A stretch of 64,000 nucleotides of DNA from Octopus sinensis. Taxonomy: Eukaryota. The notes under the pieces were generated by a model, which ran no database searches, was not told the origin of the DNA, and saw only the letters and a program-made list of their open reading frames with translations. Both the position numbers and the translations under genes were made by a program. Shown here piece after piece: positions 6,661 to 63,944 of the stretch (within the stretch, counting starts at the first letter, position 1; each line of letters starts with the position of its first letter). The stretch spans positions 11,594,001 to 11,658,000 of the forward strand of contig NC_043004.1 of the NCBI RefSeq assembly GCF_006345805.1, in the 5' to 3' direction.

Positions 6661-6683
6661 GAGAGAGAGATAGATAGATAGAG

Positions 6684-6717
<34 letters not shown>

Positions 6718-6720
6718 TGC
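6350..6720. repeat. Compound (GATA)n/(GACA)n/(TA)n/(GA)n microsatellite with an internal duplicated block
   Basis: Direct reading; the block GACAGAGACAGATATC(C)GGACAG occurs twice (~6415 and ~6495). Confidence 0.9.
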
Positions 6721-7141: not shown

Positions 7142-7484
7142 AAACATTATTTACATTATTTGCATTTAAATTCGATGTATATTAGTCCTCATCTATTTTG
7201 TTGTTAACACAACGTTTCGGCTGATATACCCTCCAGCCTTCTTCAGGAGACTTTGGGAAATTTCGAACCTGGGTTCTCATTCCTTAGGTATTTTTCGATG
7301 TTATAATAATAATTATTATTATTATCATTATTATATCGAAAAATACCTTAGGAATGAGAACCAAGGTTCGAAATTTCCCCAAGAAACCTGAAGAAAGCTG
7401 GAGGGTATATCAGCCGAAATGTTGTGTTAACAACAAACAAGATGAGGAAAAATATCCGTCGAATGTAAATAATGTAAATAATGT
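7142..7484. mobile_element. Inverted pair of Penelope-like terminal repeats, each with a hammerhead-like core
   Basis: Arms 7142-7299 and 7335-7484 are diverged reverse complements around a TAA-rich spacer; each carries CTGAAGA-A(G/A)GCTG-GAGGGTATAT-CAGCC-GAAA(C/T)GTT. Confidence 0.7.
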
Positions 7485-8004
7485 ACATAATTCCTCATCT
7501 CTTAAATATAAAACTGTATTCCTCAAACATTTCCTCGATTGCTGTGCAAGCGTAGATACGATTATAGGTTTATTCTTATTGAGTGGTACGCAATGAAGTT
7601 GGAAGGGTTAATATTTTCAACCGACAAATTCATAAACAGTTCAATATATTCTTAAAAAGTTCTTAAGGAAAATGAATATTACGGTATTTCTATAGGAAGA
7701 TAATTTAAATACATAAATAAACCTATTTGAATAAGTTTTATATAGAGACAAAATTGAAAGGCGAAATTCGCTTTGCAACAAAGCAACTATGGATGCAAAT
7801 TATCTTCACTTTCATTGTTATCCTCCACCGTATCATCTAACGTACTTCATTCACATTGTTAAAGATATAGAGATTTTGAAATATAAATAATCCAGTTGTA
7901 AGGATGGAAACTGTTAAAATATTACCTGTTAATCTGTGCTTGAAATAAACTATGTTTATTTTATATGGTTTTCGTTTTGTGCATATCAATATGTATATTG
8001 TAAC

Positions 8005-8160
8005 TCGTCTGTCTTTACGTTCTGAGTTCAAATTATGCCGAGGTCGACTTTACCTTTCAACCTTACGGAGTCGATAAATTAAGTACAGTTGCGTACTGGG
8101 GTCGATCTAAGTGACTGTCTCCCTCCCCCAAAATTTCGGGTCTTATGCCTAAAATAGAAA
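8005..8160 (+). mobile_element. SINE family A, short-tail form, 5'-truncated
   Basis: ACGTTCTGAGTTCAAATT, GCCGAGGTCGACTTT, AAATTAAGTAC, CTGGGGTCGAT, CCCCAAAATTTCGGGTCTTATGCC. Confidence 0.8.
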
Positions 8161-9208
8161 AGAATATGTATATCGTAACATAAATATAACGTAACAAATA
8201 CGAACACCCACATATTTGTACATATGCATTCATGCACACTTAAGCATGTAAACACAAACATATATTTATAAGTATGTATTGGTTTGTGTGTGTGTTTGTG
8301 TGCATGATTGTATGTGTGTATGTTAGTATACGAATGCGAATGTTCACTTTATGTTATTCTTACAGAGCCCGCAACTTCCTATTGTATAAAACAACGTCTC
8401 GCAATCTCATTTGAAGTACGCTGCCACACATTTGTGTATAAATATTTTGTTTTCATGGTAGCGTTGAAATCTCTAAATGTCGTCTCGTCTTACACAAAGA
8501 ACCATCGTAACGGAGACATGGTTCCATCATCTGCAGAAAAAGCAGCCATGACGTAAATCATAGTCCTATAAAATAACAAACCCTTAAGTGCTAGTGACGC
8601 TATAAAACAAACAAAACCTTTTTACGGGGTGAATACACCAACCGAACTGATGTATACGAATATCGGGCGCCTCTGGAGGGGTTTCCTCTGGTCAAATGAT
8701 CTAAACCAACCCACAAGTTTTAGGGTAACTAAACTCCACGAAGAAATTGTCCGTTTTCTAGTGCCACAGGCAAACGCAAATGTCCAGAGGAATATATTTC
8801 CCAGTGAAAACTTACCGCCAGTTATTACAGTATCCAGATCCGTCGTCTCATAATTCTCTTTAATTCCATTTAGTGACAGGTACCCCCCATAATATCGAAA
8901 ATGTTGATACAAGAAACCTACTTGAGTTTCCTAACTTCAAGGTTATTAACATACAAGGATATACGGTTGTAAATCATGAGTTGCTATTTCCTATTCTAGC
9001 ATCCTCAATTTCAATTATATCTACCATAAATTCTTACAATAACAACGCAATTTATTCCGTTTAACCACTTCTGTCCTACACAAGCATATCCGTGGATATT
9101 TGTGGAAATTTGTCGATCCTGCACATTGCTTTCGACTACCACGTACAATAAATAGAGAATCCAATGAGGAAAAAATATGTGGTCTCAGAACATGGCTGAA
9201 GTAAATAT

Positions 9209-9779
9209 AAGGCAGCGAGCTGACAGAAACTTTAGCCGGGAGAAATGCTTAGTGGTATTTCGCTTGTCGTTACGTTCTGAGTTCAAATTCCGCCGAGGTC
9301 GACTTTGCCTTTCATTCTTCCGGGATCGTATGCACTGGGGTCGATGTGATCGACTTAATCCGTTTGTCTGTCCTTGTTTGTCCCCTCTATGTTTAGCCCC
9401 TTGTGGGTAATAAAGAAACAGGTAATTCGTCTGCAGTTACTTTCTGAGTTCAAATTCCGCCGAGGTCGACTTTGCCTTTCATCCTTTCGGGGTTGATTAA
9501 ATAAGTACCAGTAATGCACTGGGTTCGATGTAATTGACTTAATCTGTTTGTCTGTCCTTGTTTGTCCCCTTTATGTTTAGCCCCTTGTGGGCAATAGAGA
9601 AATAGGTATTTCGTCTGCCGTTACGTTCTGAGTTCAAATTCTGCCGAGGTCGACTTCACATTTCATCCATTCGGGGTTGATAAATTAAGTGCCAGTTACG
9701 CACTAGGGTCGATATAATCGACTTAATACCTTTGTTTGTCCCCTCTATGTTTAGCCCCTTGTGGAAAATTAAGAAATAA
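9209..9779 (+). mobile_element. SINE family A tandem trimer (one head, three bodies)
   Basis: Full head at 9209; units 2 and 3 restart at GGTA(A/T)TTCGTCTG at ~9421 and ~9606 (period ~185 bp). Confidence 0.85.
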
Positions 9780-10112
9780 GAACATGGCAGACGTAAAAGA
9801 TTATACCCCACTTTGTTGATACCTTCTCATATTAAAAGCTGACACTATTTTAATTCATAGCAGAACGAGGAGCAAGGTAGCAGAAATAATGGACTACACA
9901 ACAGCTCCTCTTGAACATACCTCTTCAATCTACCCGTGCTCAACATAAGTATACTACAACTTCTGTAACCCAATAGTTTACTATGACGCATTATTCAGTA
10001 CACCAAAACAATGTACCTCTAGCCAACATCCGCGATATATGACACCTGATCACACAGCATCCCACTAATACATGAACATATATATATATATATATATATA
10101 TATACTTACATG

Positions 10113-10149
<37 letters not shown>

Positions 10150-10479
10150 TTATATATATGGTGGTGGAGTCCTTTATACACATGAATGTAAACAGATACA
10201 CAGCAATATTTAATTGCGAGTTCATAAACAGAATTATGTCCGAATAGCTAAATGTGTCATGCAGTTGATTGACAATCATTAAGCGAAACGGGGAAATGAT
10301 GCAGTTTACCAACTCACAGCTATCACAATACACACAGGTATTGTATGTGTGTGTGAGTGTGTGTATACACACACACATACACAAACATATATATATATAT
10401 ATATATGTGTGTATGTATGTATGTGCATATATATACATAGTGTATGTATATATATATATATGTATAAAAATTATATATA

Positions 10480-11190
10480 AAAATACAAAATGTGACAAGA
10501 ACGCAAAACACACAAAGAGACGACACAAAAATCTTCAGTTCAGGAACCGGATCATCCTCGCAATTTCGGCTGATTAATCTTGATATCGCTCCGATCCAGC
10601 AAGCCCCAAGGAAAAACTAAGCTGCGAGCATTAGATTTCTTGGAAAAAGGATCGAATGTATACGAAACAAGGACAGAAAAACGGACGATGCCACACGAAT
10701 ATAAATACAAAAAAAAAACAAAAATAAAAAAACAAGAATAGTAATAACAGGACAAAAACAGCGGGTGTCTTACGACTTTAGACAGTTTAACTTATCTTAG
10801 CTGGCGTATTTTGAAATAAATACCTTTGCGGCAGACGAAGAAAACGGTGTTGTCGTGGCGGCGGTCAAAGGCCGAAAGGCTAGTTAACAAGCGGTCACGT
10901 GAGAGGAGAGAAGAAGAGAGAGAAAACCAGGGGGCAAAGGAATTAAAGAAAGAGAGAAAAAGAGGGACAAAGGCACCAGGGGGGGGAGAAAGAAGGAATT
11001 AAAGTGGGGAGAAGAAACAGGGCGCGCCAAGGATTGGCTTGGCAAAAGAATCAGTGGTGCAAAGTGAGAAAGACAGAGAAATGTGAGAGAGTGGGGGAAG
11101 AGGAGACCAAAGAATCAGAGGCAAGAAAAGAGAAAGACAGAGACAGTGAAGTATTGAGAAAGTGTGTAGAAGTCGTACAATGGTGGAATG
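10480..11190. mobile_element. Probable Penelope-like element terminal region
   Basis: Purine-rich tract with degenerate hammerhead-like pieces (CAGACGA ... GGCCGAAAG near 10834-10880; TTTCGGCTGAT at ~10564); no RT motif recognised. Confidence 0.35.
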
Positions 11191-11231
11191 TTTACATACA
11201 TAAGGGAACACAAATATATATATATATATAT

Positions 11232-11303
<72 letters not shown>

Positions 11304-11307
11304 TGAA

Positions 11308-11630
11308 GGCGCATAGCTCAGTGGTTGGAGCGTCGAGCTTACGATCGTGAGGTTGTGAGTTCGAGTCACGGACCGAGCGGTGTGTTGTGTTCTGGAGCAA
11401 GACACTTTACTTCACATTGCTTCAGTTCACTCAGCTGCAGAAATGAGTTGTAACGTCACAGGTGCCAAGCGGTATCGGCCCCTTTGCCCTTCCTTTGGAT
11501 AACACTAGTGTCGTGGATAGGGAAGGCTGGTATGCATGGGCGACTGCTTGTCTTCCATAAACAAACTTGCCCGGACTTGTGCCTGGGAGGGTAACATTCT
11601 AGGTGACGCTAGTCATGACCGAAGGGGGTC
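11308..11630 (+). mobile_element. tRNA-derived SINE, family C
   Basis: GGCGCATAGCTCAGTGGTTGGAG (A-box) and GAGTTCGAGTC (B-box), followed by non-tRNA body GAGCAAGACACTTTACTTCACATTGC; flanked by (GATA)n and (TA)n. Confidence 0.8.
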
Positions 11631-24953: not shown

Positions 24954-25026
24954 GTACTGTTGTAGCTCCTAAAACATTTGACAAAATCAAAAACTATAAA
25001 TAAGAAAATTAAGCAGTTTTAATGGG
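24390..25026. mobile_element. Possible piggyBac-type MITE interrupted by a TA/TATG microsatellite
   Basis: TTAA-CCCATT at 24386-24395 and AATGGG-TTAA at 25021-25030; only a short TIR match. Confidence 0.45.
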
Positions 25027-25734
25027 TTAAACTGAAATATTACTCAGTAAGTTTTGCAGAACTTGTATTTATCATTCATTTACAAGAAGGCTGATGGCGA
25101 CTTCAATGTTTCGCCTTGTTAATCTTCGTCGGATACAACGGATTTCTGTAGATTTTCAGTTTAACTGCTTCCATTCAGGATCGAAATTTAGGAATTATGC
25201 CAAAAGTGCCGCACTGTGCCATGAAACATCTCACTGCATGCATATGAATTAAACGCCTTAACCACAGAGCCAGTTATATAAAAATATAGTGGTGATGTTC
25301 AATTGATATTAATTGTTAGGTGTGGCTAGTCACATATATCAATGTTTATCTAGCTATACTTTGCCAAAACTAATTCCTACATACTCCTTTAAATATCTGA
25401 AGCATTTCGTTATAAGCGGAGGGTAGAGGGTGATTTATCTCTATAGGCACACACATATATGTACATACACAGAACCACAATAATAAACGTTCGCTCATAC
25501 ATACACAACATCGTATACATCATATATGTAGGTATGTATCTGTGTGTGTGTCTGTTTGTGTGTATATATATATATATATATATTCATATATATATATATA
25601 TCTATATATATATTATATATATCTATATATATATATAATATATACATAATATATCAATATATGCATATATACATATATATATATGTACATACCTACATAT
25701 ATATGTATATATACATGCATATATGGGTACAGGA

Positions 25735-35423: not shown

Positions 35424-35804
35424 TCTCTCTATATAAACGGCAGTTTGTCTGTCTGCGTGTCTGTGTGTCTGTTAGGTTGTACCCTCACCCTGACCACGGC
35501 TTTCAACCGATTCTGATGAAACTTGACACACACATAGCCCAATGTTATAATTCAAAACTAACACAGCGAATATTTTGAAAAGTTCCCCCAGTTCTGAAAA
35601 AATCGATAAATTCGACATGGGGTCGAGAATCAGAAACACAAACCACAGACTGTCTAGGGGACGCAACTCGACCTTTTTAACTTTCAAAAAAAATTTACCA
35701 TAATTTTTTTTCCATTTTTTTGCTATTTTTTGGCTATAACTCTCTAAAAATGCTTTATAGTTATTTTCCTTACAAACCCGAGCAACGCCGGGCGATACTG
35801 CTAG
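35424..35804 (+). mobile_element. Non-autonomous Helitron, complete copy
   Basis: 5' TC after A, followed by a GTCT-type microsatellite; 3' subterminal hairpin CCCG-AGCAACGC-CGGG, then CTAG followed by T; homologous to 44725-45031. Confidence 0.8.
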
Positions 35805-36157
35805 TCAATAATAAAGTAAAGTTAGTAAAGTATAATTTTATATTCTTTATGAAAAACCTAATTCAGAAACGCGCGTCCATGGACGACCAGATATTGATTG
35901 ATTTTCGTTGCTTTACTCTCTGCCTGTGTGAATAACCTTCAAGTGTTTTGGTTTCTCTGGAAGACCCTTTTTAAAGTAGAAGAAATAGCTACGATTTTTG
36001 GCTGCTATTTCTAAACTTCGGTGTGTGATGAAGCAAATCTTTGCTGAACCCTTTTATTACTATTACTTAGTTTACCGTGAACTGGTCCTTTTTTCATACC
36101 GAATTCTACTTGGTGAAATTATTGATTACTTCTTAATTAATTAATTTTACCCTTTGT

Positions 36158-44134: not shown

Positions 44135-44707
44135 TTACGGCACAAGGCCAGCAGATTTGGGGTAAAGGGTAAATCGATTACATTGATCCCAGTGCTTAAC
44201 TGGTACTTATTTTATCGACCCTAAAAGATGAAAAGTCGTCCTCGGTGGAATTTGAACTCAGAGCGTAAATACAAACAGAATAACTATTTCTATTTCTGTA
44301 CTACCTACAAGGGGCTAAACACAGAGAGGAAAAACAAGGACAGACAAACGGATTAAGTCGATTATATTGACTCCAATATGTAACTGGTACTTATTTAATC
44401 GACCCCGAAAGGATGAACGGCAAAGTCGACCTCGGCGGCATTTGAACTCAGAACGTAGCGGCAGACGAAATACCTATTTCTTTACTACCCACAAGGGGCT
44501 AAACACAGAGGTGACAAACAAGGACAAACAAGCGGATTAAGTCGATTGCATCGAACCCAGTGCGTAACTAGTACTTATTTAATCGACCCCGAAAGGATGA
44601 ACGGCAAAGTCGACCTCGGCGGAATTTGAACTCAGAACGTAACGGCAGACGAAATACTGCTACGTATCTCGCCTAGCGTACTAACGTTTCCGCCAGCTAA
44701 CCGCCTT
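44135..44707 (-). mobile_element. SINE family A tandem trimer (one head; last unit has the short-type tail)
   Basis: Head at 44707; re-entry at the reverse complement of GGTATTTCGTCTG near 44475; third unit from ~44290. Confidence 0.85.
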
Positions 44708-44724
44708 TGTGTGAGCCAAAAATC

Positions 44725-45031
44725 GGCTTTCAACCGATTCTGATGAAACTTGACACACACATAGCCCAATGTCATAATTCAAAACTAACGCAGCGAAAAT
44801 TTTGAAAAGTTCCCCCAGTTCTGAAAAAAATCGATAAATTCGACATGGGGTCGAGAATCAGAAACACAAACCGCAAACTGTCTAGGGGACGCAACTCCAC
44901 CTTTTTTAACTAAAAAAAAAATTTACCATCATTTTTTTCCATTTTTTTGTTATTTTTTGGCTATAACTCTCTAAAAATGCTTTATAGTTATTTCCCTTAC
45001 AAACCTGAGCAACGCCGGGCGATACTGCTAG
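44725..45031 (+). mobile_element. Non-autonomous Helitron, 5'-truncated
   Basis: Highly similar to 35488-35804; ends CCTGAGCAACGCCGGGCGATACTGCTAG. Confidence 0.82.
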
Positions 45032-45375
45032 TTTATATATAAAAGTGAAGTTGTGTGTCTGTCTCCTACGATTTAGATTCCTAACTACTCCCACATTTTG
45101 CGGTGCAGTGTAACCAAAAGCGGGTATCTTATAGTCGTGATTCATATCGAGCCCTTCCGGGTATTACCGCGCGTCTACGATGAGTCTACGATTTAAAAAA
45201 AAATTACCAACATGTTTTTCCATTTTAATGCATTTTTTTCGCTATTATATAAGGGAAGTAACTCTCTAAAAATGTCTACGACGAGTCAACGATTTAAAAA
45301 AAATTTACGATAATTTTTTTTCCAATTTTAATGCATTTTTTTGCTATTTTGGGGTATAACTCTCTGAAAATGCTT
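45032..45375 (+). mobile_element. Second Helitron subfamily: 5' end and body, lacking its 3' end locally
   Basis: Starts T(T)TATATATAAAAGTGAAGTTGTGTGTCTGTC immediately after the previous CTAG; has an internal duplication; stops at TATAACTCTCTGAAAATGCTT, which in the other copies lies just upstream of the 3' terminus. Confidence 0.7.
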
Positions 45376-45380
45376 ACATT

Positions 45381-45762
45381 CTTCTTCTTGTCTCAGTCAT
45401 TTGACTGCGGCCATGCTGGAGCACCGCCTTTAGTCGAGCAAATCGACCCCAGGACTTATTCTTTGTAAGCCCAGTACTTATTCTATCGGTCTCTTTTGCC
45501 GAACCGCTAAGTAACGGGGACGTAACCACACCAGCATCGGTTGTAAAGCAATGCTAGGGGAACAAACACACACATATACATATATACACATACATATATA
45601 CGACAGGCTTCTTTCAATTTCCGTCTACCAAATCCACTCACAAGTCATTGGTCGGCCCGGGGCTATAGTAGAAGACACTTGCCCAAGATGTCACGCAGTG
45701 GGACTGAACCCGGAACCATGTGGTTGGTTAGCAAGCTACTTACCACACAGCCACTCCTGCGC
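45381..45762 (-). mobile_element. SINE family B, young full-length copy
   Basis: Reverse complement close to the other B copies over its whole length. Confidence 0.92.
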
Positions 45763-45926
45763 CATTATATATATATATTCTCTCCCAATTTCGCAGTGTG
45801 TGTACGTGCATAAATAAATGTATTTACGGTAATGTATCCCATTGCTTAGGTTATAATATTTCATTGATATATGTTTTGATGAACGTCAGATCTGATAACA
45901 AGATTGCTTTGCACCATTCAAGGCCT

Positions 45927-48900
45927 CAGAGATCAAAGAGGGGTGCCGACAGAGATCAAAGAGGGGTGCCGACAGAGATCAAAGAAGGTGTCGACAGAGA
46001 TCGAAGGGGGTGCCGACAGAGATCAAAGAGGGTGCCGACAGAGATCAAAGGAGTGCCGACAGAGATCAAAGAGGGGTACCGACAGAGATCAAAGGAGGTC
46101 CCGACAGAAATCAAAGAGGGGTGCCGACAGAGATCAAAGAGGGGTTTCAACAGAGATCAAAGGGGGTGCCGACAGAGATCAAAGAGGGGTGCTGACAAAG
46201 ATCAAAGGGGGTGCCGACAGAGATCAAAGAGGGGTGTCGATAGAGATCAAAGAGGGGTGCCGACAGAGATCAAAGGGGGTGCCGACAGCAATCAAAGAGG
46301 GGTGCCGACAGCAATCAAAGAGGGGTGCCGACAGAGATCAAAGAGGGGTGCCGACAGGAATCAAAGAGGGTGCAGACAGAGATCAAAGAGGGGTGCCGAC
46401 AGAGATCAAAGAGGGGTGCCGACAGAGATCAAAGAGGGGTGCCGACAGTGATCAAAGTGAGGTGCCGACAGAGATCAAAGGGGATGCACAGAGATCAAAG
46501 GGGGTGCCGACAGAGATCAAAGAGGGTGCCGACATAGATCAAAGACGGGTGCCGACAGATATCAAAGGTGGTGTACAGAGATCAAAGGGGTACCGACAGA
46601 GATCAAAGAGGGGTACCGACAGAGATCAAAGAGGGGTGCCGACAGAGATCAAAGAGGGATGCCGACAGAGATCAAAGAGGGGTGCCGACAGAGATCAAAG
46701 AGGGGTGCCGAGAGAGATCAAAGAGGGGTGCCGACAGAGATCAAAGGGGGTGCCGACAGAGATCAAAGAGGGGTGCCGACAGATATCAAAGAGGGATGCC
46801 GACAGAGATCAAAGAGGAATGCACAGAGATCAAAGAGGGGTGCCGACAGAGATCAAAGAGGGGTGTCGACAGAGATCAAAGAGGGATGCACAGAGATCAA
46901 AGGGAGTGCCGACAGAGATCAAAGAGGGGTGCCGAAAGAGATCAAAGAGGGGTGCCGACAGAGATCAAAGAGGGGTGCCGACAGAGATCAAAGAGAGGTG
47001 CCGATAGAGATCAAAGCGGATGCACAGAGATCAAAGGGGGTGCCGACAGAGATCAAAGACGGGTGCCGACAGAGATCAAAGACGGGTGCCGACAGATATC
47101 AAAGGGGGTGTACAGAGATCAAAGGGGTACCGACAGAGATCAAAGAGGGGTACCGACAGAGATCAAAGAGGGGTGCCGACAGAGATCAAAGAGGGATGCA
47201 CAGAGATCAAAGGGAGTGCCGACAGAGATCAAGGGGGTTGCCGACAGAGATCAAAGGGGGTGCCGACAGAGATCAAAGAGGGGTGCCGACAGCAATCAAA
47301 GAGGGGTGCCGACAGCAATCAAAGAGGGGTGCCGACAGAGATCAAAGAGGGGTGCCGACAGGAATCAAAGAGGGTGCAGACAGAGATCAAAGAGGGGTGC
47401 CGACAGAGATCAAAGAGGGGTGCCGACAGAGATCAAAGAGGGGTGCCGACAGAGATCAAAGAGGGTGCCGACAGAGATCAAAGGGGGTACCGACAGAGAT
47501 CAAAGAGGGGTGCCTATAGAGATCAAAGGGGGTGTACAGAGATCAAAGGGGGTGCCGACAGAGATCAAAGAGGGGTACCGACAGAGATCAAAGAGGGGTA
47601 CCGACAGAGATCAAAGAGGGATGCTGACAGAGATCAAAGAGGGGTGCCGACAGAGATCAAAGGGGATGCACAGAGATCAAAGGGGATGCACAGAGATCAA
47701 AGGGGGTGCCGACAGAGATCAAAGAGGGTGCCGACAGAGATCAAAGACGGGTGCCGACATATATCAAAGGGGGGTGCCGACAGAGATCAAAGGGGTACCG
47801 ACAGAGATCAAAGAGGGGTACCGACAGAGATCAAAGAGGGGTGCCGACAGAGATCAAAGAGGGATGCACAGAGATCAAAGGGAGTGCCGACAGAGATCAA
47901 AGGGGGGTGCCGACAGAGATCAAAGGGGGTGCCGACAGAGATCAAAGAGAGGTGCCGATAGAGATCAAAGCGGATGCACAGAGATCAAAGGGGGTGCCGA
48001 CAGAGATCAAAGACGGGTGCCGACAGAGATCAAAGACGGGTGCCGACAGATATCAAAGGGGGTGTACAGAGATCAAAGGGGTACCGACAGAGATCAAAGA
48101 GGGGTACCGACAGAGATCAAAGAGGGGTGCCGACAGAGATCAAAGAGGGATGCCGACAGAGATCAAGAGGGGTGCCGACAGAGATCAAAGGGGGTGCCGA
48201 CAGAGATCAAGAGGGGTGCCGACATAGATCAAAGGGGGTGTACAGAGATCAAAGGGGGTGCCGACAGAGATCAAAGAGGGGTACCGACAGAGATCAAAGA
48301 GGGGTACCGACAGAGATCAAAGAGGGATGCTGACAGAGATCAAAGAGGGGTGCCGACAGAGATCAAAGGGGATGCACAGAGATCAAAGGGGATGCACAGA
48401 GATCAAAGGGGGTGCCGACAGAGATCAAAGAGGGTGCCGACAGAGATCAAAGACGGGTGCCGACATATATCAAAGGGGGGTGCCGACAGAGATCAAAGGG
48501 GTACCGACAGAGATCAAAGACGGGTACCGACAGAGATCAAAGAGGGGTGCCGACAGAGATCAAAGAGGGATGCACAGAGATCAAAGGGAGTGCCGACAGA
48601 GATCAAAGGGGGGTGCCGACAGAGATCAAAGGGGGTGCCGACAGAGATCAAAGAGGGGTGCCGACAGCAATCAAAGAGGGGTGCCGACAGCAATCAAAGA
48701 GGGGTGCCGACAGAGATCAAAGAGGGGTGCCGACAGGAATCAAAGAGGGTGCAGACAGAGATCAAAGAGGGGTGCCGACAGAGATCAAAGAGGGGTGCCG
48801 ACAGAGATCAAAGAGGGGTGCCGACATAGATCAAAGGGGGTGCCGACAGAGATCAAAGAGGGTGCCGACAGAGATCAAAGGGGGTGCCGACAGAGATCAA

Positions 48901-49523
48901 AGAGGGGTGCCGACAGAGATCAAAGGGGTGCCGACAGAGATCAAAGAGGGGTGCCGACAGAGATCAAAGAGGGGTGCCTATAGAGATCAAAGGGGGTGTA
49001 CAGAGATCAAAGGGGGTGCCGACAGAGATCAAAGAGGGGTACCGACAGAGATCAAAGAGGGATGCTGACAGAGATCAAAGAGGGGTGCCGACAGAGATGA
49101 AGTAGGGATGCACAGAGATCAAAGGGGGTGCCGACAGAGATCAAATGGGGTGCCGACAGAGATCAAAGAGAGGTGCCGAAAGAGATCAAAGAGGGGTTCC
49201 GATAGAGATCAAAGAAGGGTGCCGACAAGGGTCAAAGAGGGTGCCGACAGAGATCAATGGGGTGCCGAGAGAGATCAAAGGGGGGTGCCGACAGAGATCA
49301 AAGAGGGGTGCCGACAGAGATCAAAGTAGGTACCGACAGAGATCAAAGGGGATGCCGACATAGATCAAAGAGGGGTGCCGACAGAGATCAAAGAGGGGTG
49401 CCTACAGAGATCAAAGGGGGTGCCGACAGAGATCAAAGAGGGGTGTCGACAGATATCAAAGAGGGTGTCGACAGAGATCAAAGAGTATGCCGAAAAAGAT
49501 CAAAGAGGGTGCCGAAAGAGATC
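45927..49523 (+). repeat. Minisatellite array, ~160 copies of a ~19-23-bp unit (consensus GTGCCGACAGAGATCAAAGAGGG)
   Basis: Direct reading; nearly every unit retains AGATCAAAG while the G-tract length and the GCCGAC half vary; copy number estimated from length/period. Confidence 0.98.
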
Positions 49524-49563
49524 TTCTCTTACAAACCCGAGCAACGCCGGGCGATACTGCTTG
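49521..49563 (+). mobile_element. Helitron 3' terminus fused to the end of the array
   Basis: ATCTTCTCTTACAAACCCGAGCAACGCCGGGCGATACTGCTTG|T matches ATTT(T/C)CCTTACAAACCCGAGCAACGCCGGGCGATACTGCTAG|T at 35763-35805. Confidence 0.85.
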
Positions 49564-49584
49564 TAACTAAATAAAGGGTTGTTA

Positions 49585-55014: not shown

Positions 55015-55476
55015 TATTATTATTACTATTTATCATTAATAACTCTCATCATCATCATCATGGTCATCATTATCATCGTCATCATCATCGCCATCATCGT
55101 CATCATCATCATCATCGTCGTCGTCGTCGTCGTCGTCATCGTCGCGCCGTCGTCTTCCTCGTTTTACGTCGTTGCTATTGTCAAACGATATCGTCATTAT
55201 CATCATCATCATCATCTCCGTGAGTTATCGATCATCATCGCCATCAACTTTATGTGTTATTCACTCTAAAATCCTCCTCCCCTCCTCATCATCATCATTA
55301 TCACCAACAACAACAACAACGGCACTACCGCCGCCGACGCTACCACCACCACTACCATCCTCATCATCATCACCAACATCATCATCATCATCATCATCGT
55401 CAATATCATCATCATCATCACCACCACCGCCGCCACTACTTCCACTCATCATCATCACCAACATCATCATCACCAA

Positions 55477-55519
<43 letters not shown>

Positions 55520-55770
55520 TTCATCGTCATAATCATCGTCAATATCATCATCATCATCACCACCGCCGCCGCTGCCGCCGCAACCACCACCACTATCATC
55601 ATCATCATTTTCATCATCACCACCACCACCACCACAACAACATCAACATCATCATCATCACCACCACCACCATCACCATCATCATCATTATCATCATCCC
55701 CACCACCACCAGCACCACCGTCACCACTACCACCACCACCACCACCACCACACACCAGCTCCACCACCAT
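55015..55770. repeat. Mosaic trinucleotide repeat (CAT/CGT/CAA/CAC/CCG blocks)
   Basis: Direct reading; yields poly-His/Ser/Ile/Pro/Thr ORFs in all frames. Confidence 0.92.
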
Positions 55771-57125: not shown

Positions 57126-60120
57126 CAGTAGTTTTATTTTTATAGCGTGCTTTCACTTCACTACCGAGCGCAGCTCTGTGTGCCTTGGGTATGTGCTGTG
57201 ATTTGTTGTGATGCTCTGATGGTTATTGTATGGAAAGTGTTCTGCGTAGGATGTGTGCAGTGCCTAGTAGTGCAATTTTCTGTATGTTATATGTGTTTGT
57301 AAGTCCTGGTGTTTTTGTTATGTATTTGTCTGAATATTTTTTATCATGCCTAATGCACCTACTATGATAGGAATTGTTTCTGTTTTCAGGTTCCACATTC
57401 TAGTTACCTCTATTTCCAGGTCTTTGTATTTTGAGAGTTTCTCCATTTCTTTTAGAGACACGTTGTCATCTGCCGGTATTGATACATCAATTAGAAAGCA
57501 TTTTTTTTCTTCATGATCTCTGACAACTATATCTGGTCTGTTGGCCTTAATTTCTCTATCTGTGTGTATCGGCATATCCCAGAGTATGGTTGCTTTCTCG
57601 TTTTCTGTGACCTTTTCTGGTGTGTGCCTATACCATCTTTTTTCTGTTGTTATTCCATAATGTTGGCATAGCTTCCAATGTATGTAGGTTCCAACTCTGT
57701 CATGTCTGTGAATATATTCCTTCTTAGCCAGGACTGGGCAGCTAGAGATAATATGATTTATTGTTTCTTGTCCATCTCCACATATTCTGCAGTTACTTGT
57801 AATATTTCTTTTCATTACATGTTTTTGGTAATTTCTGGTGGGGAGGCTTTGGTCTTGTGCTGCAATTAAAAATCCCTCTGTTTCTGCTTTGAGTCCTGAG
57901 CTTCTCAACCATTGCTGGGATTTTTCTTTGTCTATTTCTTTTGCGTTTAGTTTAGTGCAGTATTTACCATGAGGGGGTTTTTCTTGCCATCGTTTTACCA
58001 TGGCTCGTTGCTGTTCTATTTTTAGTTTGGATTTCATTTGTTTTATAGCTTTTGTTGTTTCTTCATCATCTTCTTCTTTTTCTTTGTGTTTATTAGGTGG
58101 TATGATTTCTTGTTTGTATTTGTCAGCTTCCTTAAATACTGAGAACAGTTTTTTGTTTTGCTCGTGTTTTGCTGCTATCTGGATCAGTTTTCCTTCCTTC
58201 TGAAGTAGGTATTTTTGCAGTCCTATGGTGGTTATTTTATAGTAGTTTTCCAGCTGTATAAGGCCTCTACCACCTTCTATACGTTGTATATATAGTCTTT
58301 CTATGTCAGATTTTGGGTGATGCATCCTAGATCCTGTCAGTATTTTTCTTGTTTTCCTATCTATTTTGGACAGTTCATTTCGTGTCCAGTTAAGGATATT
58401 GTAGCTGTAACTTATAACTGGGACAGCTAAAGTGTTGATACCTATTATCTTGTTTTTAGCATTGAGCTCTGTGTTTAGTATTGATCTAACTCGTCTATAA
58501 TATTCTTTTTTTATTTTCTCTTTCATTTGTGGTGTGTTGTGTCTTATCTAGTTCATGGATTCCTAAGTATTTGTAAGTTTGGCTTTGGTCTAATTCTTTT
58601 ATTTCATTGGTTTTATCTAGTGTGATGTTGTTACTCTTAACTAGTTTTCCTCTTTTCATGGTTACTTTGGCGCATTTTTCTAATCCAAATTTCATATCTA
58701 TTTCTTTGGTAAATCCATGAACTGTCTTTAATAGTGTTTCCAGCTGTTTGTCATTTGCAGCGTATAGTTTTAGGTCATCCATATATAAAAGGTGGCTGAT
58801 CGTTTTGCCGTAACATTTATATCCGCATCCAGTTCTATTTAGCATATCAGATAGAGGTGACAGTGCCAAGCAGAAAAGGAGTGGAGAGAGCGTGTCTCCC
58901 TGGAATATTCCTCTTCTAATGGGGATGTCTTTGGTTTTCATGAGTCCCTCTTTTGTTTGGAGGTGTAGGACTGTTTGCCATTTATTCATAGAGTGCTCTA
59001 TGAATTTTATGATTGTTGGTGCTACTTTGTTAATGGCTAGTGTTTCGAGGATCCATGTGTGGGGATGCTATCAAACGCCTTTTTGTAGTCAATCCAGGCC
59101 ATACTGAGGCCTTTCTTCTTTCTGTGGCTGTCTTCAGTTACGGCTTTATTAATCATTAGTTGATCTTTACAGCCATATGAGCCCTTGCGGCATCCTTTCT
59201 GCTCTTCTGGGAACAGTTTGTTTTCGTCCAGGTGCTTGTTCAGCCTTTGCGATATCACTGCAGTAAATGCCTTGAACATAGTAGGGAGACAGGTTATTGG
59301 TCTGTAGTTTTCTGGTTTTGTTGTTTCATTTGATTTGAGAATTAAGACGGTTTTCCCCTTCGTGAGCCATTCAGGCATTGTCTCTGGCTCTGCTAGTATG
59401 CTGTTAAAGTTTTCAGCCAGCTTTTTGTGCATTCCTGTTAGATATTTCAACCAGAAGTTGGGGATCTTGTCATGCCCAGGTGCCTTCCAGTTGCTTAGTT
59501 TTTGCAGTGCCTGGGTGACCTCTTCAGTTGTTATGGGGGTCCAAAGTTGTTCAGATGCCGAGTTTGTTATTTTCATACTCCTTTTTTTTGGCTGTTCGTT
59601 CGCCGACCATATTTCTTTCCAGAAATCTTCCAATTCTTCTGCCGTTGGTGCTGCAGTGACTTCTATTTTATTTTTGCCCAGTTCTTGGTAGAACTTTTTG
59701 GGGTCGGAGTTGAACTTTTTGTTTTGTTCAAAGAAGCGTTGGCGTTTCTCGTACCGGCGGATCCTTTGAGCTTTGGCAAGGATATCTTGCTTCAGCTTTT
59801 CTTTTATCTCCGGCAAATCTTTTTCTGTGATGTTATATTTGCGGAGCATTTTTGTTCTCTTTTTGTTGCTCAGTAGCGTTGCTTGTTCGCTGATTTCATT
59901 AAGAATCGACAAGTCTTTTCTAATTTTTTTTATTTTGTTTTGGATGTTATTTATCCACAGGGTTTGTTTGGGTGGTGGTACTCCTGTTTGGGCGGGTTTG
60001 GGTGAGTATCCAGCTTCTTTTGTGGCTGCAGTGGCTGCTGCGTATATCAAGTCATTTAGTTCAGTGATATCACTTTTTTTTGTTTCAGTGGCTAGTTCAG
60101 TGACGGCTAGGTTTATGTTG
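57126..60120 (-). mobile_element. 5'-truncated R4/Dong-like non-LTR retrotransposon (RT + CCHC + restriction-like endonuclease) inserted in (TAA)n
   Basis: Flanked by TAA tracts on both sides (57087-57125 and 60122-60278); ~100-nt 3' UTR ending ACTACTG-AATAATAAT; see the ORF entry. Confidence 0.93.
57223..60120 (-). pseudogene. RT-RLE ORF broken by three single-base indels, no premature stops seen
   Basis: NYRPITCLPTMFK, WIDYKKAFDSIP, GIFQGDTLSPLLF, HLLYMDDLKLY, YKYLG, CRICGDGQETINHIISSC, RHD, RPDIVV, DVSIP, EKLSKYKDL; the corrected C-terminus reads QKIALLGTAHILRRTLSIQ with the stop at 57223-57225. Confidence 0.92.
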
Positions 60121-60194
<74 letters not shown>

Positions 60195-60226
60195 CATCAT
60201 CATCATCATTATTATTATTATTATTA

Positions 60227-60278
<52 letters not shown>

Positions 60279-61500
60279 AGGCGGCGAGCTGGCAGAAAAG
60301 TTAGCACGCTAGGCGAAATGCGTAGCAGTATTTTGTCTGCCGTTACGTTCTGAGTTCAAATTCCGCCGAGGTCGACTTTGCCGTTCATCCTTTCGGGGTC
60401 GATTAAATAAGTACCAGTTACATATTGGAGTCAATATAATCGACTTAATCCGTTTGTCTGTCCTTGTTTGTCCCCTCTGTGTTTAGCCCCTTGAGGGTAG
60501 TAAAGAAATAGGTATTTCGTCTGCTGTTACGTTCTGAGCTCAAATTCCGCCGAGGTCGACTTTGCCTTTCATCCCTTCGGGGTCGATTAAATAAGTACTA
60601 GTTACGCACTGGGGTCGATGTAATCGACTTAATCCCTTTGTCTGTCCTTGTTTGTCCCCTCTGTTTTAGCCCCTTGAGGGTAGTAAAGAAATAGGTATTT
60701 CGTCTGCTGTTACGTTCTGAGTTCAAATTCCGCCGAGGTCGACTTTGCCGTTCATCCTTTCGGGGTCGATTAAATAAGTACTAGTTACGCACTGGGGTCG
60801 ATGTAATCGACTTAATCCCTTTGTCTGTCCTTGTTTGTCCCCTCTGTCCCTGGTGTTTAGCCCCTTGAGGGTCGTTAAAGAAATAGGATCTTTTCGTCTG
60901 CTGTTACGTTCTGAGTTCAAATTCCGATTCCGCCGAGGTCGACTTTGCCGTTCATCCCTTCGGGGTCGATTAAATAAGTTCTAGTTACGCACTGGGGTCG
61001 ATGTAATCGACTTAATCCCTTTGTCTGTCCGTGTTTGTCCCCTCTGTGTTTAGCCCCTTGAGGGTAGTAAAGAAATAGGTATTTCGTCTGCTGTTACGTT
61101 CTGAGTTCAAATTCCGCCGAGGTCGACTTTGCCGTTCATCCTTTCGGGGTCGATTAAATAAGTACTAGTTACGCACTGGGGTCGATGTAATCGACTTAAT
61201 CCCTTTGTCTGTCCTTGTTTGTCCCCTCTGTGTTTAGCCCCTTGAGGGTAGTAAAGAAATAGGTATTTCGTCTGCTGTTACGTTCTGAGTTCAAATTCCG
61301 CCGAGGTCGACTTTGCCGTTCATCCTTTCGGGGTCGATTAAATAAGTACTAGTTACGCACTGGGGTCGATGTAATCGACTTAATCCCTTTGTCTGTCCTT
61401 GTTTGTCCCCTCTGTGTTTAGCCCCTTGAGGGTAGTAAAGAAATAGGTATTTCGTCTGTCCTTACGTTCTGAATTCAAATTCTGCCGAGGTTGACTATCA
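60279..61500 (+). repeat. Tandem array of SINE family A bodies: one head, six full ~184-bp units and a partial seventh
   Basis: Unit starts at 61086, 61270 and 61454 (184-bp period); units 5 and 6 are identical by eye; all six share CTTGAGGGT rather than the CTTGTGGG of the dispersed copies. Confidence 0.95.

Positions 61501-62169: not shown

Positions 62170-62172
<3 letters not shown>
61573..62172 (-). mobile_element. ~600-bp non-coding element flanked on both sides by (TAA)n
   Basis: Complex sequence with sharp boundaries against TAA tracts; no long ORF, TIR or clear pol III boxes; same polarity relative to the TAA strand as the Dong-like element. Confidence 0.55.
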
Positions 62173-62223
<51 letters not shown>

Positions 62224-62240
62224 CATTATTATTATTATTA

Positions 62241-62296
<56 letters not shown>

Positions 62297-62336
62297 GTTA
62301 TTATTGTTATTATTATTATTGTTATTATTGTTGTTA

Positions 62337-62373
<37 letters not shown>

Positions 62374-62390
62374 CATTATTATTATTATTA

Positions 62391-62474
<84 letters not shown>

Positions 62475-62540
62475 TTGTTGTTGTTGTCGTTGTTGTTGTT
62501 ATTATTATTATTACTGACGCGTCACCGTCGTCGTCGTCAG
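62173..62540. repeat. (ATT)n/(ATC)n/(GTT)n microsatellite
   Basis: Direct reading. Confidence 0.95.
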
Positions 62541-62698
62541 TGTAATATCTTGTTTTTGTTGCTGTAATTTTTCATAGCCTTTTTCTTTCTTCTTTTCTTT
62601 GCGTTGTTCTTAATAAATGATAAATTACAGCGAATTCCTTGTCCAGTTCACTTTCCTTTCCCTTTTTTTATTTTATTTTCCTCACTTCCCCTCCTCAG

Positions 62699-62767
62699 CA
62701 CGACCGACCGAAAATGACGTCAAGAATGCAAATCAGCTGGAATACCAACTCTTACCTGATAATAAAA
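62699..62767 (+). CDS. Candidate 69-nt internal coding exon of an unidentified host gene
   Basis: Long polypyrimidine tract ending CCTCCTCAG, donor AAA|GTAAGA, length divisible by 3, open in phase 1 (xRPTENDVKNANQLEYQLLPDNK) and phase 0; no homology recognised. Confidence 0.4.
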
Positions 62768-63105
62768 GTAAGATTTACGGCACTAGAACTAATGACATTT
62801 TTTTTTATTTGTTTTTACTGTTATATTTTTGTTTCTATTTTTGTTGAAATTCTGAGGGGGTAGAGTGGTGGTGGTGGGGGTGGTGATGTGAGTTGTTTGC
62901 CTTTGTTTTGTTGTTGTTTTTAGTTTGTTTTTCCGCAGCAAAGAATTTTAATAAATGTTTTCGGTGGATTATTGGTTGGCAGGATATGAGGGTGGGTGTG
63001 ATTTGGTGGGGAGGAGATGGGTGTGACTGGAAGGGTGAGAGAGGGGCAAACGGCAACGTGCATAGAAGCAAAAGAAAAGGATATGAAAATCGTTAGAAAC
63101 AGAGG

Positions 63106-63339
63106 TTGAAGAAGAAAAAGAAGAAGAAGAAGAAAGAAGAAGAAGATAGAAGAAGAAAGAAGATGATGAAGAAGAAGAAGAAGGAAAAAGAGGAGAAGAA
63201 GAAGAAAGAGAAGAAGAAAAGAAAAAAAGAAGAAGAAAAGAAAGAGAAGAAGGAGGAGAAGAAGAAGAACAACAACAGCAAGAAAGAGAAGAAGAAGAAG
63301 AAGAAGAAGAAGAAGAAGAAGAAGAGAAAGAAGAAGAAT

Positions 63340-63370
<31 letters not shown>

Positions 63371-63404
63371 CGACGACGACGACGATGATGATGGGGATCA
63401 TGAA

Positions 63405-63473
<69 letters not shown>

Positions 63474-63910
63474 AGAAAGAAAGAAAGAAAGAAAGAAAGA
63501 CAGGAAACAACAGCAACAGGGTCAACAATAACCCCGAAACACAAATTCCTTCGCAGCTTCTCTAATCATTTTAGATTACTGTTATCCTTAGTATTTTCTT
63601 GTTACCTTTGCTGCTGCCGCCGCTGCTGATGGTGTTGTTGCAGTTGTTTGTCTTCTCCTTCTTCTTCTTTTCCTTCTACTTACTCTTCTCCACCATCTCA
63701 ATCACTCAATCGCCTTCTTAATCCTTCACTACTTTTTTCTTCTCCCTTACTTCTTTCTTCTTCTTCTTCTTCTTCTTCTTCTTCTTCTTCTTCTTCTTCT
63801 TCTTCTTCTTTCTTCTTTCTTCTTCTTCTTCTTCTTCTTCTTCTTCTTCTACTACTCCTACTACTACTATTACTACTACTCTTTTTCTTATTCTTCTCTT
63901 TCTTATTTTT

Positions 63911-63944
<34 letters not shown>

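What the first reader, a model, noticed from the sequence alone, without database searches (positions are those of the whole stretch)
45927..49523. Natural TOPFlash-like array: ~160 tandem TCF/LEF sites, each paired with a GCCG helper-like motif
Seen: nearly every unit keeps AGATCAAAG (CTTTGATCT on the minus strand). The common variant AGATCAAAGGGGGT occurs repeatedly (e.g. 46154), and 47475-47489 reads AGATCAAAGGGGGTA. Most units also carry GCCGACA one base 5' of the core. Established: the TCF/LEF HMG box binds SCTTTGATS; AGATCAAAGGgggta is the multimerised monomer of the SuperTOPFlash Wnt reporter; invertebrate TCFs have a C-clamp that binds GC-rich helper sites (RCCG; GCCGCCR in Drosophila). 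Inference: this could be a very dense bipartite Wnt-response element, or a TCF sink, built by minisatellite expansion. The core looks more constant than the flanking G-tract. A rough chance estimate for an 8-mer core in a random 23-bp unit is about 1 in 1,400, before requiring the helper motif, so coincidence among a genome's many minisatellites remains possible.
Basis: partly seen in the sequence, partly recalled or inferred. Interest (0 to 1): 0.88.

Follow-up and report, generated by a model that had tools for sequence, protein, structure and literature searches.

The report
Octopus minisatellite carrying TCF-like motifs
About 160 head-to-tail copies of a 23-base unit that spells a Wnt-pathway (TCF) binding site are really there and belong to a repeat family scattered through the octopus genome, but the copies change like an ordinary, neutrally expanding repeat, and no evidence here shows it is a working regulatory element.

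Summary
Window 45927-49523 is a 23-bp tandem array of 161 copies with consensus CAGAGATCAAAGAGGGGTGCCGA. It holds 135 exact AGATCAAAG, 153 ATCAAAG and 98 GCCGACA, and none of the 9-mers occurs elsewhere in the window.

The array is one member of a dispersed 22-23-bp minisatellite family. I found three more arrays in Octopus vulgaris on two chromosomes, of 2.1 kb, 0.35 kb and 9.2 kb.

It grew by multi-unit duplications, so the sites are copies of one ancestral unit, not independent events. It lies inside a short interspersed element in transposon-rich DNA with no host gene recognised (long-ORF and Pfam check only).

Each HMG-type site has GCCGACA directly 5' (KK0) and 4-5 bp 3' (AK4/5, close to the fly optimum AK6).

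The apparently more constant core is explained by its A/T richness. Unit-private substitutions hit the core as often as base composition predicts. Core-broken variants and a CAAAG-less 10-bp derivative have been amplified.

One point mildly favours constraint: between arrays the 18-nt helper-plus-HMG block is constant and the spacer varies.

Most likely this is a neutral minisatellite. TCF binding is plausible but untested.

The parts
45927..49523 (+). 23-bp minisatellite array: 161 units, consensus CAGAGATCAAAGAGGGGTGCCGA. Each unit is an HMG/TCF-like GAGATCAAAG[A/G], a G-rich 4-5-bp spacer and a helper-like GCCGACA.
   Evidence: TRF; motif counts; unit table; 57 unit haplotypes.
47494..47801 (+). 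Example of an internal multi-unit duplication. Units 71-84 are repeated at 48201-48507 (units 103-116), with 12 of 14 units identical. Other blocks: 47134-47449 and 48508-48824; 46959-47179 and 47914-48133; 46264-46445, 47267-47449 and 48642-48824.
   Evidence: Unit-level self-comparison.
49524..49564 (+). Conserved 3'-terminal module of a short interspersed element ('E' family). It starts 5-8 bp after the last repeat. The 31-mer AAACCCGAGCAACGCCGGGCGATACTGCTTG lies at 49533-49563.
   Evidence: BLAST and alignment to copies at 35774-35804 and 45001-45031. The same 31-mer, with 0-2 mismatches, occurs 2x in L001 and 2x in L002 of O. vulgaris.
45034..45375 (+). Left part of the same E-family copy ('E3'). 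It has the 5' motif ATAAAAGTGAAGTTGTGTGTCT at 45039-45060. Two ~100-bp tandem pieces (45173-45274, 45274-45375) are homologous to the segment that directly precedes the 3' module in intact copies.
45376..45778 (-). SINE-like insertion (an abundant family in the window) interrupting the E3 element between its left part and the array.
   Evidence: Many 70-86% identical copies in the window. The same family flanks array A4 in O. vulgaris.
45779..45926 (+). 148-bp AT-rich segment between the SINE and the first repeat, unique in the window. Together with the array it replaces the ~10 bp (TAGTTATTTT) found at this point in intact E copies.
   Evidence: No other match in the window or L001; alignment.
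35430..35805 (+). Intact reference copy of the E-family element (E1) with no array. A second copy, E2, at 44724-45033 is 94.5% identical.

Best explanation
The feature is a recently expanded member of a dispersed 22-23-bp minisatellite family of an Octopus genome (O. vulgaris or a close relative).

A single ancestral unit happened to contain GATCAAAG next to GCCGACA. It was multiplied by replication slippage and unequal exchange, including duplications of blocks of 8-14 units, to about 160 copies here and up to about 400 elsewhere.

In the window the array sits inside a copy of a short interspersed element, just upstream of that element's conserved 3' end. The surrounding DNA is full of SINEs, LINE fragments and simple repeats.

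The variation among units is what mutation bias predicts: G/C sites, a G-run and a CpG vary most, followed by amplification of chance variants. The TCF/LEF motif is therefore carried along as part of the unit rather than maintained for Wnt signalling.

Shown here: the array, its mosaic structure, its relatives, its position in the element and the neutral-looking mutation pattern. Inferred: the expansion mechanism and the lack of selected function.
For: - Array and counts.
- Mosaic of multi-unit duplications with 12/14, 12/14 and 9/10 identical units.
- Three further arrays in O. vulgaris. A2 is at L001 8672-10795 (92.5 copies, GCCGACAGAGATCAAAGAGGAAT, alternating a/b units). A3 is at L001 ~24960-25310. 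A4 is at L002 2150-11363 (9.2 kb, 22-bp unit, 271 exact AGATCAAAG). They lie on chromosomes OX597822.1 and OX597818.1.
- The four arrays share no flanks except a common SINE.
- In W the invariant positions include A2, T18 and A23 outside the core. G5 inside the 9-mer is among the more variable. Substitutions per site are 10.9 (non-core G/C), 6.7 (core G/C), 2.7 (core A/T) and 2.0 (non-core A/T).
- Substitutions private to single units in the 9-mer core, observed versus expected from base class: W 14 vs 13.3, A2 28 vs 31.2, A4 12 vs 14.8.
- Core-destroying variants spread. In A4, CAGAGATCAAGGAGTGTGCCGA occurs x10, and about 2.5 kb consists of derived 10-bp units GATCAAACCG/GTTCAAACCG.
- 36 W units have lost the helper-like CCG through variants that were then duplicated.
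- Context: the array abuts the E-family 3' module. No host gene was recognised from long ORFs and Pfam; the only protein domains are LINE reverse-transcriptase fragments.
- Chance is adequate. The probability is 1 in 1,200-10,000 per unit. The genome is 2.8 Gb and ~66% repeats (PMC13282606). This one 64-kb window alone gives 147 TRF rows.
Against: - Between arrays the 18-nt block GCCGACA[G/A]AGATCAAAGA is constant. 6 of the 9 extra character states among eight unit types fall in the 5-nt spacer. The binomial P is 0.005 uniform and 0.03 if only G/C sites mutate. The test is post hoc and the positions include a slippage-prone G-run.
- The conserved blocks coincide with what a TCF with a C-clamp would contact. 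The geometry (KK0 plus AK4/5) is one that fly TCF binds well.
- Raw variation at ATCAAAG is lower than elsewhere in all three large arrays.
- With hundreds of redundant sites, selection on single units would be invisible anyway. The within-array neutrality test therefore cannot exclude array-level function.
- Tandem repeats with tens of homotypic TF motifs can be real, normally repressed enhancers (PMC13373173).
Confidence: 0.7

Rival explanations
1. The arrays are functional bipartite TCF/C-clamp binding arrays. Octopus TCF binds GAGATCAAAG[A/G] through its HMG box and the flanking GCCGACA through its C-clamp. The arrays would then act as Wnt-responsive tandem-repeat enhancers, possibly kept repressed, or as a buffer or sink for TCF/beta-catenin.
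For: - GATCAAAG fits the WRE CTTTGWWS exactly in 136 units.
- The first four helper bases GCCG, the most critical in fly mutagenesis, are present.
- The geometry is KK0 plus AK4/5, and AK6 and AK5 are bound well by TCF/Pan.
- The helper-plus-HMG block is constant across four arrays while the spacer varies.
- Four arrays hold at least 480 exact 9-mers.
- There is precedent for homotypic-motif tandem-repeat enhancers and for chromatin sink ideas.
Against: - There is no exact GCCGCCR or RCCGCC helper. Position 5 is A in every array.
- 87 of 161 units have A rather than S after CAAAG.
- Private mutations are not depleted in the motif.
- CAAAG-less derivatives and helper-less units have been amplified.
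- No gene or promoter was recognised in the window.
- The motif was found after the fact, among very many minisatellites and many known TF motifs.
- Whether octopus TCF has a C-clamp was assumed from the general statement about invertebrate TCFs and was not tested.
Confidence: 0.15
2. The constant 18-nt block is kept because it serves the repeat itself or another factor. It could be a binding site for a different protein, a recombination or amplification signal, or a remnant of a mobile element that seeds arrays. On this reading the TCF likeness is incidental.
For: - The constant block is one contiguous stretch running across the unit boundary (GCCGACAGAGATCAAAGA), not two separate boxes.
- The arrays are dispersed on at least two chromosomes without shared flanks, which calls for some seeding mechanism.
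- The window array is embedded in an interspersed element at the slot just before its 3' module. This resembles TE-borne tandem repeats in oysters (PMC7492417).
Against: - The three O. vulgaris arrays do not abut the E-family module.
- The unit shows no significant similarity to E-family sequence.
- No candidate factor or signal can be named.
- A G-run hot spot could by itself produce the spacer variability.
Confidence: 0.12
3. The array encodes a repetitive protein. ORFs of up to 753 aa are open on the + strand, and O. vulgaris annotations translate related arrays.
For: - Open reading frames exist in all three + frames.
- O. vulgaris gene models CAI9728524.1 and CAI9722894.1 contain such translations.
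Against: - The unit simply contains no stop triplet. By my arithmetic about a third of random 23-mers would share this.
- The period is 22-23 bp, not a multiple of 3, and indels shift the frame constantly.
- No Pfam family reaches its cut-off.
- The peptide repeat changes order between 22- and 23-bp arrays.
Confidence: 0.02

Closest known systems
Synthetic TOPFlash / 7xTCF Wnt reporters
   Same: Both are head-to-tail multimers of AGATCAAAGG followed by GGGT(A). 24 units read AGATCAAAGGGGGT and one reads the full 15-mer.
   Different: This one is natural, with 161 units at a 23-bp period. Most units read AGATCAAAGA. Each unit also carries GCCGACA. There is no adjacent minimal promoter or gene, and activity is untested.
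Bipartite HMG-Helper Wnt cis-regulatory modules of Drosophila TCF/Pangolin (nkd, Notum) and vertebrate TCF1E/TCF4E
   Same: An HMG site is paired with a GCCG-type motif in KK0 and AK4/5 arrangements, within the ranges reported as bound or active.
   Different: The helper is GCCGACA, which is 6/7 of GCCGCCR and 5/6 of RCCGCC. Known modules hold a few pairs in unique sequence near target genes, not hundreds of tandem copies. Binding and Wnt response are not shown.
Classical minisatellites (VNTRs) and dispersed satellite-like families
   Same: The unit is 22-23 bp, G-rich and strand-asymmetric. There are length variants, mosaics of duplicated blocks, and related arrays at several loci with array-specific consensus.
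   Different: Nothing essential differs. Population polymorphism could not be checked.
Tandem repeats carried inside non-autonomous mobile elements (oyster Cg_HINE, Drosophila DINE-1; by analogy the VNTR of SVA, from my own knowledge)
   Same: In the window the layout is a left module with a GTCT-like microsatellite, a variable segment, the repeat array, and then a short conserved right module with a small GC palindrome.
   Different: The E family has 10-13-bp direct repeats at its ends, one perfect. It has no subterminal inverted repeats and no 5' TC, and its hairpin is no better than shuffles. So it is not a Helitron or Helentron. Three of the four arrays are not in such an element.
Homotypic TF-motif tandem-repeat enhancers (MORC3-restricted PU.1 repeat at IFNB1; GGAA microsatellite enhancers)
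   Same: Tens to hundreds of copies of one TF motif are created by tandem repetition.
   Different: Those have demonstrated TF occupancy, regulated accessibility and target genes. None of that is known here.

Membership tests
Minisatellite / VNTR-type tandem repeat | Head-to-tail copies of a 10-100-bp unit | tested here: met
   Period 23, 161.3 copies.
Minisatellite / VNTR-type tandem repeat | Variant units and multi-unit duplications, the signature of slippage or unequal exchange | tested here: met
   57 unit haplotypes. Duplicated blocks of 8-14 units with 75-90% of units identical.
Minisatellite / VNTR-type tandem repeat | Related arrays at other loci with array-specific consensus (dispersed family) | tested here: met
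   A2 and A3 in L001, and A4 in L002, of O. vulgaris.
Minisatellite / VNTR-type tandem repeat | Copy-number polymorphism among individuals | not testable with these tools
   No population or read data were available.
Bipartite TCF (HMG + C-clamp Helper) Wnt response element | HMG site matching CTTTGWWS, or the 11-bp fly consensus | tested here: met
   GATCAAAG occurs in 136 units. The 11-mer GAGATCAAAG[A/G] fits 9-10 of 11 positions. The strict S..S form fits in 47 units.
Bipartite TCF (HMG + C-clamp Helper) Wnt response element | Helper site GCCGCCR (fly) or RCCGCC (vertebrate) | tested here: inconclusive
   There are 0 exact GCCGCCR. GCCGACA occurs in 98 units and is 6/7 of the consensus, with the first four bases intact. 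The minimal RCCG occurs 124 times. In the fly, all seven bases matter and the first four matter most.
Bipartite TCF (HMG + C-clamp Helper) Wnt response element | Helper close to the HMG site in a permissive orientation and spacing | tested here: met
   KK0 on the 5' side and AK5/AK4 on the 3' side, by the oligonucleotide definitions of Table S1. 86 units fit AGATCAAAG[AG]N4-5GCCG.
Bipartite TCF (HMG + C-clamp Helper) Wnt response element | Motif positions under more constraint than the rest of the unit, within arrays | tested here: not met
   Private substitutions in the core match base-class expectation: 14 vs 13.3, 28 vs 31.2 and 12 vs 14.8. Core-broken variants have been amplified.
Bipartite TCF (HMG + C-clamp Helper) Wnt response element | Motif blocks conserved between related arrays while the spacer diverges | tested here: inconclusive
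   6 of 9 extra states fall in the 5-nt spacer (P 0.005 uniform, 0.03 for G/C sites only). The test is post hoc, the spacer is a G-run, and there are few events.
Bipartite TCF (HMG + C-clamp Helper) Wnt response element | TCF occupancy and beta-catenin-dependent transcriptional activity | not testable with these tools
   This needs EMSA, reporter assays and CUT&RUN.
Helitron / Helentron-type HINE carrying central tandem repeats | Array lies between a left module and a short conserved right module with a palindrome | tested here: inconclusive
   The layout is met for the window array. It is not met for A2, A3 or A4. The palindrome is a 4-6-bp stem with z -0.8 to -1.2 against shuffles.
Helitron / Helentron-type HINE carrying central tandem repeats | No target-site duplication; subterminal inverted repeats; 5' TC | tested here: not met
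   A perfect 13-bp direct repeat flanks the L001 copy, and AT-rich imperfect ones flank the others. No subTIR was found. The 5' ends read CTGAAGTTG or CGGCAGTTTG.
Homotypic TF-motif tandem-repeat enhancer | Many copies of one TF motif generated by tandem repetition | tested here: met
   135 exact 9-mers in 3.6 kb.
Homotypic TF-motif tandem-repeat enhancer | TF-dependent enhancer activity on a target gene | not testable with these tools
   No functional data. No gene was recognised in the window.

The most novel reading that the evidence does not exclude
The 22-23-bp family is a cephalopod-lineage amplification of genuine bipartite TCF/C-clamp sites (KK0 plus AK4/5). Octopus TCF occupies the arrays, which hold hundreds of sites each on several chromosomes. 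The arrays act as Wnt-responsive, perhaps normally silenced, tandem-repeat enhancers or as a buffer for nuclear TCF/beta-catenin. Array-level selection keeps the 18-nt helper-plus-HMG block constant while the spacer drifts.
Probability: 0.1. Interest if true: 0.8.

Novelty: new member of a known kind. Interest (0 to 1): 0.33.

Why it matters
On the likely reading, this is an ordinary minisatellite. It then matters in two ways.

It is a caution. A striking transcription-factor motif repeated 135 times is one evolutionary event, and "core conservation" inside a tandem array can be produced by base composition alone.

It is also an annotation warning. At least four O. vulgaris gene models translate arrays of this family.

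If the minority reading were true, it would be a natural TOPFlash. That would be a repeat family spreading hundreds of optimally spaced TCF/C-clamp sites through a cephalopod genome. It would extend the recently described class of homotypic-motif tandem-repeat enhancers to Wnt signalling and to invertebrates. It could be tested cheaply by gel shift and reporter assay.

Tried and rejected
- Exact-pattern scans of JGI metagenome contigs and IMG/VR for two adjacent units found nothing. These collections do not hold cephalopod genomes.
- Locating the window in an assembly by exact products of a LINE ORF and of the longest ATG-started array ORF found nothing on record. The species is therefore inferred only from shared repeats and from the O. 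vulgaris relatives.
- I first read the flanking element as a Helitron or Helentron (HINE): 3' CTAG followed by T, a GC hairpin, and a GTCT microsatellite in the left part. I rejected this because one copy has a perfect 13-bp target-site-like duplication. There are also no subterminal inverted repeats and no 5' TC, and the hairpin is no better than shuffles.
- Derivation of the 23-bp unit from E-family sequence or from the 148-bp leader failed. Local alignment was no better than shuffles on either strand.
- The four arrays share no founder flanks, only a common SINE.
- Divergence shows no clear gradient from edge to centre along the array.
- Rfam at gathering threshold and ARAGORN found no RNA gene in the window or near the array.
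- The coding-repeat reading was rejected. The period is not a multiple of 3, the frame shifts constantly, and the only Pfam hit is a sub-threshold artefact.
- A literature search for minisatellites of TCF sites found nothing relevant.
Full report
**1. What is there**

Window 45927-49523 is a single tandem array of period 23, with 161.3 copies, 87% matches, 5% indels and consensus CAGAGATCAAAGAGGGGTGCCGA.

Exact counts in the array:
- AGATCAAAG 135
- ATCAAAG 153
- AGATCAAAGA 87
- AGATCAAAGG 45
- AGATCAAAGGGGGT 24
- AGATCAAAGGGGGTA 1, at 47475-47489
- GCCGACA 98
- GCCGACAGAGATCAAAG 71

No AGATCAAAG occurs elsewhere in the 64 kb. All 91 near-matches to the 23-mer lie in the array.

The nuances are these. 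Only 33 units are the exact consensus, and there are 57 different unit sequences. Units are 20-23 bases long. 117 units keep both ATCAAAG and RCCGA, 36 have lost the helper-like part and 8 the core.

**2. How the array was built**

At unit level the array is a mosaic of duplicated blocks:
- Units 71-84 recur as 103-116, with 12 of 14 units identical.
- Units 55-68 recur as 117-130.
- Units 47-56 recur as 90-99.
- Units 16-23 recur as 61-68 and as 123-130.

The 161 sites are thus not independent observations. They descend from one unit by slippage and unequal exchange, with very recent multi-unit duplications. I saw no clear gradient of divergence from edge to centre.

**3. Relatives elsewhere**

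Because the unit has no stop triplet, the + strand is open in all three frames. I used the 753-aa translation as a probe.

It retrieved an O. vulgaris gene model, CAI9728524.1 ("proton myo-inositol cotransporter-like"). Its first ~270 residues are a translated array.

The locus is L001, on chromosome OX597822.1. It holds array A2 at 8672-10795, with 92.5 copies of GCCGACAGAGATCAAAGAGGAAT. Units of type ...GAATGCCGA and ...GAGTACCGA alternate. It also holds a small degenerate array A3 at about 24960-25310.

An exhaustive profile search found a second model, CAI9722894.1. Its locus is L002, on chromosome OX597818.1.

L002 carries array A4 at 2150-11363. This is 9.2 kb with about 305 parsed 22-bp units (GATCAAAGACGGTGCCGACAGA) and 271 exact AGATCAAAG. 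These are interleaved with about 2.5 kb of a derived 10-bp repeat, GATCAAACCG/GTTCAAACCG.

The window array is thus one member of a dispersed family present on at least two O. vulgaris chromosomes. The four arrays share no flanking sequence other than a common SINE.

The window's own species could not be fixed. It shares the interspersed-element termini and SINEs with O. vulgaris.

**4. Context in the window**

The array ends 5-8 bp before a 41-bp module at 49524-49564. This module is the conserved 3' end of a short interspersed element that I call E.

Intact copies lie at 35430-35805 and 44724-45033 and are 94.5% identical. The 31-mer AAACCCGAGCAACGCCGGGCGATACTGCTAG recurs with 0-2 mismatches twice in L001 and twice in L002.

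Upstream, 45034-45375 carries the E-type 5' motif. It also carries two ~100-bp pieces homologous to the segment that directly precedes the 3' module in intact copies.

Between this left part and the 3' module lie:
- a SINE insertion (45376-45778, minus strand),
- a unique 148-bp AT-rich segment, and
- the array.

In intact copies about 10 bp occupy this slot. The array therefore lies inside an E copy.

This layout resembles tandem repeats carried by Helentron-type HINEs in oysters (PMC7492417). However, the E family fails the defining features of that group:
- One copy has a perfect 13-bp flanking direct repeat, and others have imperfect AT-rich ones.
- There are no subterminal inverted repeats.
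- The small GC hairpin is no better than shuffles.

The three O. vulgaris arrays do not abut an E module, so the association is local, not general.

The rest of the window is SINEs, simple repeats and frameshifted LINE reverse-transcriptase fragments. No host gene or RNA family was recognised, from ORFs of 110 aa or more, Pfam, Rfam and ARAGORN. Spliced exons would not have been detected by these checks.

**5. Is the TCF core specially conserved?**

Raw per-position variation is indeed lower at ATCAAAG in W, A2 and A4.

But in W the positions A2, T18 and A23 outside the core are equally invariant. G5 inside the 9-mer is among the more variable positions.

Substitutions per site sort by base type rather than by motif:
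- non-core G/C 10.9
- core G/C 6.7
- core A/T 2.7
- non-core A/T 2.0

Indels concentrate at A13, the G-run and the CCG.

To avoid counting amplified variants, I took substitutions private to singleton unit haplotypes. The table compares observed hits in the 9-mer core with the number expected from the G/C versus A/T rates of the same array.

| Array | Observed in core | Expected |
|---|---|---|
| W | 14 | 13.3 |
| A2 | 28 | 31.2 |
| A4 | 12 | 14.8 |

None of these differs from expectation.

Variants that break the site do spread. A CAAGG haplotype occurs x10, and kilobases of CAAAC units occur in A4. Helper-less units recur through duplicated blocks in W.

The limitation is that, with hundreds of redundant sites, selection on single units would be undetectable in any case.

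**6. What favours the TCF reading**

By the oligonucleotide definitions of Archbold et al. 2014:
- AK6 = AAGATCAAAGG + 6 bp + GCCGCCA
- KK0 = GCCGCCA + AAGATCAAAGG

The tandem arrangement GCCGACA|GAGATCAAAGA|GGGGT|GCCGACA therefore gives every HMG-type site a helper-like motif in KK0 and in AK5 (AK4 in 22-bp units). AK6 was the best-bound and most active configuration, AK5 was used in the original binding work, and KK0 was intermediate.

The helper matches 6 of 7 positions, with the critical first four intact. No exact GCCGCCR or RCCGCC occurs.

Across eight unit types from the four arrays, the contiguous 18-nt block GCCGACA[G/A]AGATCAAAGA is constant. 6 of the 9 extra character states fall in the 5-nt spacer (P 0.005 uniform, 0.03 for G/C sites only). 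This is post hoc, rests on few events and involves a slippage-prone G-run. Still, it is what array-level constraint on a bipartite site would look like.

Tandem repeats with tens of homotypic TF motifs are now known to act as strong, normally repressed enhancers in mammals (PMC13373173).

**7. Chance**

A random 23-bp unit read as a tandem repeat contains:
- GATCAAAG in about 1 of 1,200-1,500 cases,
- AGATCAAAG in 1 of 3,500-5,500 cases,
- the 8-mer plus RCCG in 1 of 7,000-10,000 cases.

The O. vulgaris assembly is 2.8 Gb and about 66% repeats. This single 64-kb window yields 147 TRF rows.

By my own inference, many such coincidences are expected genome-wide for this factor alone, and more once all well-known motifs are allowed. 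As an illustration, the array next to A3 has a unit containing TGACGTAG, which is CRE-like.

**8. Verdict**

The sequence is a competent-looking bipartite TCF site by published rules. Nothing testable here shows selection for, or use of, that property, and several observations fit neutral turnover.

I rate it a new member of a known kind: a dispersed minisatellite family. There is roughly a 10-15% chance that the arrays are biologically meaningful TCF targets.

Noticed in passing
window 9330-9741, 44170-44657, 60328-61496: SINE-like sequence (..GTTCTGAGTTCAAATTCCGCCGAGGTCGAC..) is arranged as tandem arrays of period 184 bp, with 2.2, 2.7 and 6.3 copies at 83-93% matches. Single copies of the same family are scattered through the window.
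   Followed up: no
window 35430-35805, 44724-45033, 45034-49564; L001 50344-50709 and 66300-66704 (minus); L002 1368-1398 and 14574-14604: A family of ~370-410-bp interspersed elements. It has a conserved 5' motif (ATAAAGCTGAAGTTGTCTGTGT with a GTCT-like microsatellite) and a nearly invariant 31-nt 3' end (AAACCCGAGCAACGCCGGGCGATACTGCTAG). Internal sequence is heterogeneous. AT-rich flanking direct repeats are present, including a perfect 13 bp at the L001 copy. The class is unresolved: it looks Helitron-like at the 3' end but makes target-site duplications.
   Followed up: partly
L001 9382-9903 and 10001 onward; L002 1-7468 and 10001-10753: At least four gene calls listed for the O. vulgaris assembly (two traced to accessions: the N-terminus of CAI9728524.1 and CAI9722894.1; plus a 173-aa and an 840-aa call) are, or overlap, translations of this minisatellite family. 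They are probably annotation artefacts caused by the stop-free unit.
   Followed up: partly
L002 2318-2514, 2619-2797, 3141-3305, 4350-5003, 7230-7483, 8637-8890, 10874-11048: Blocks of a 10-bp repeat (GATCAAACCG/GTTCAAACCG) are interleaved with the 22-bp units. The 10-bp unit appears to derive from the 22-bp unit by internal deletion. The two together form higher-order repeats of ~282 bp and more.
   Followed up: partly
L001 25310-25700: Directly after array A3 lies an unrelated tandem repeat of ~38 bp (AAATGACGTAGCGGTTCGCCAAACGAGATCGATAA). Its unit contains a CRE-like TGACGTAG. This is another minisatellite that spells a transcription-factor motif.
   Followed up: no
window 57318-60209 (minus strand): A LINE-type retrotransposon remnant. 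Three consecutive ORFs carry RVT_1 and zf-RVT domains in different frames (frameshifted). A (TTA)n run flanks it at 60122-60277.
   Followed up: partly
window 55046-55769 and 62172-63942: Long compound trinucleotide arrays, (TCA/TCG/CAT/CCA)n and (TTA/TTG/GAA/ATG/TTC/CTA)n, give long low-complexity ORFs on both strands.
   Followed up: no
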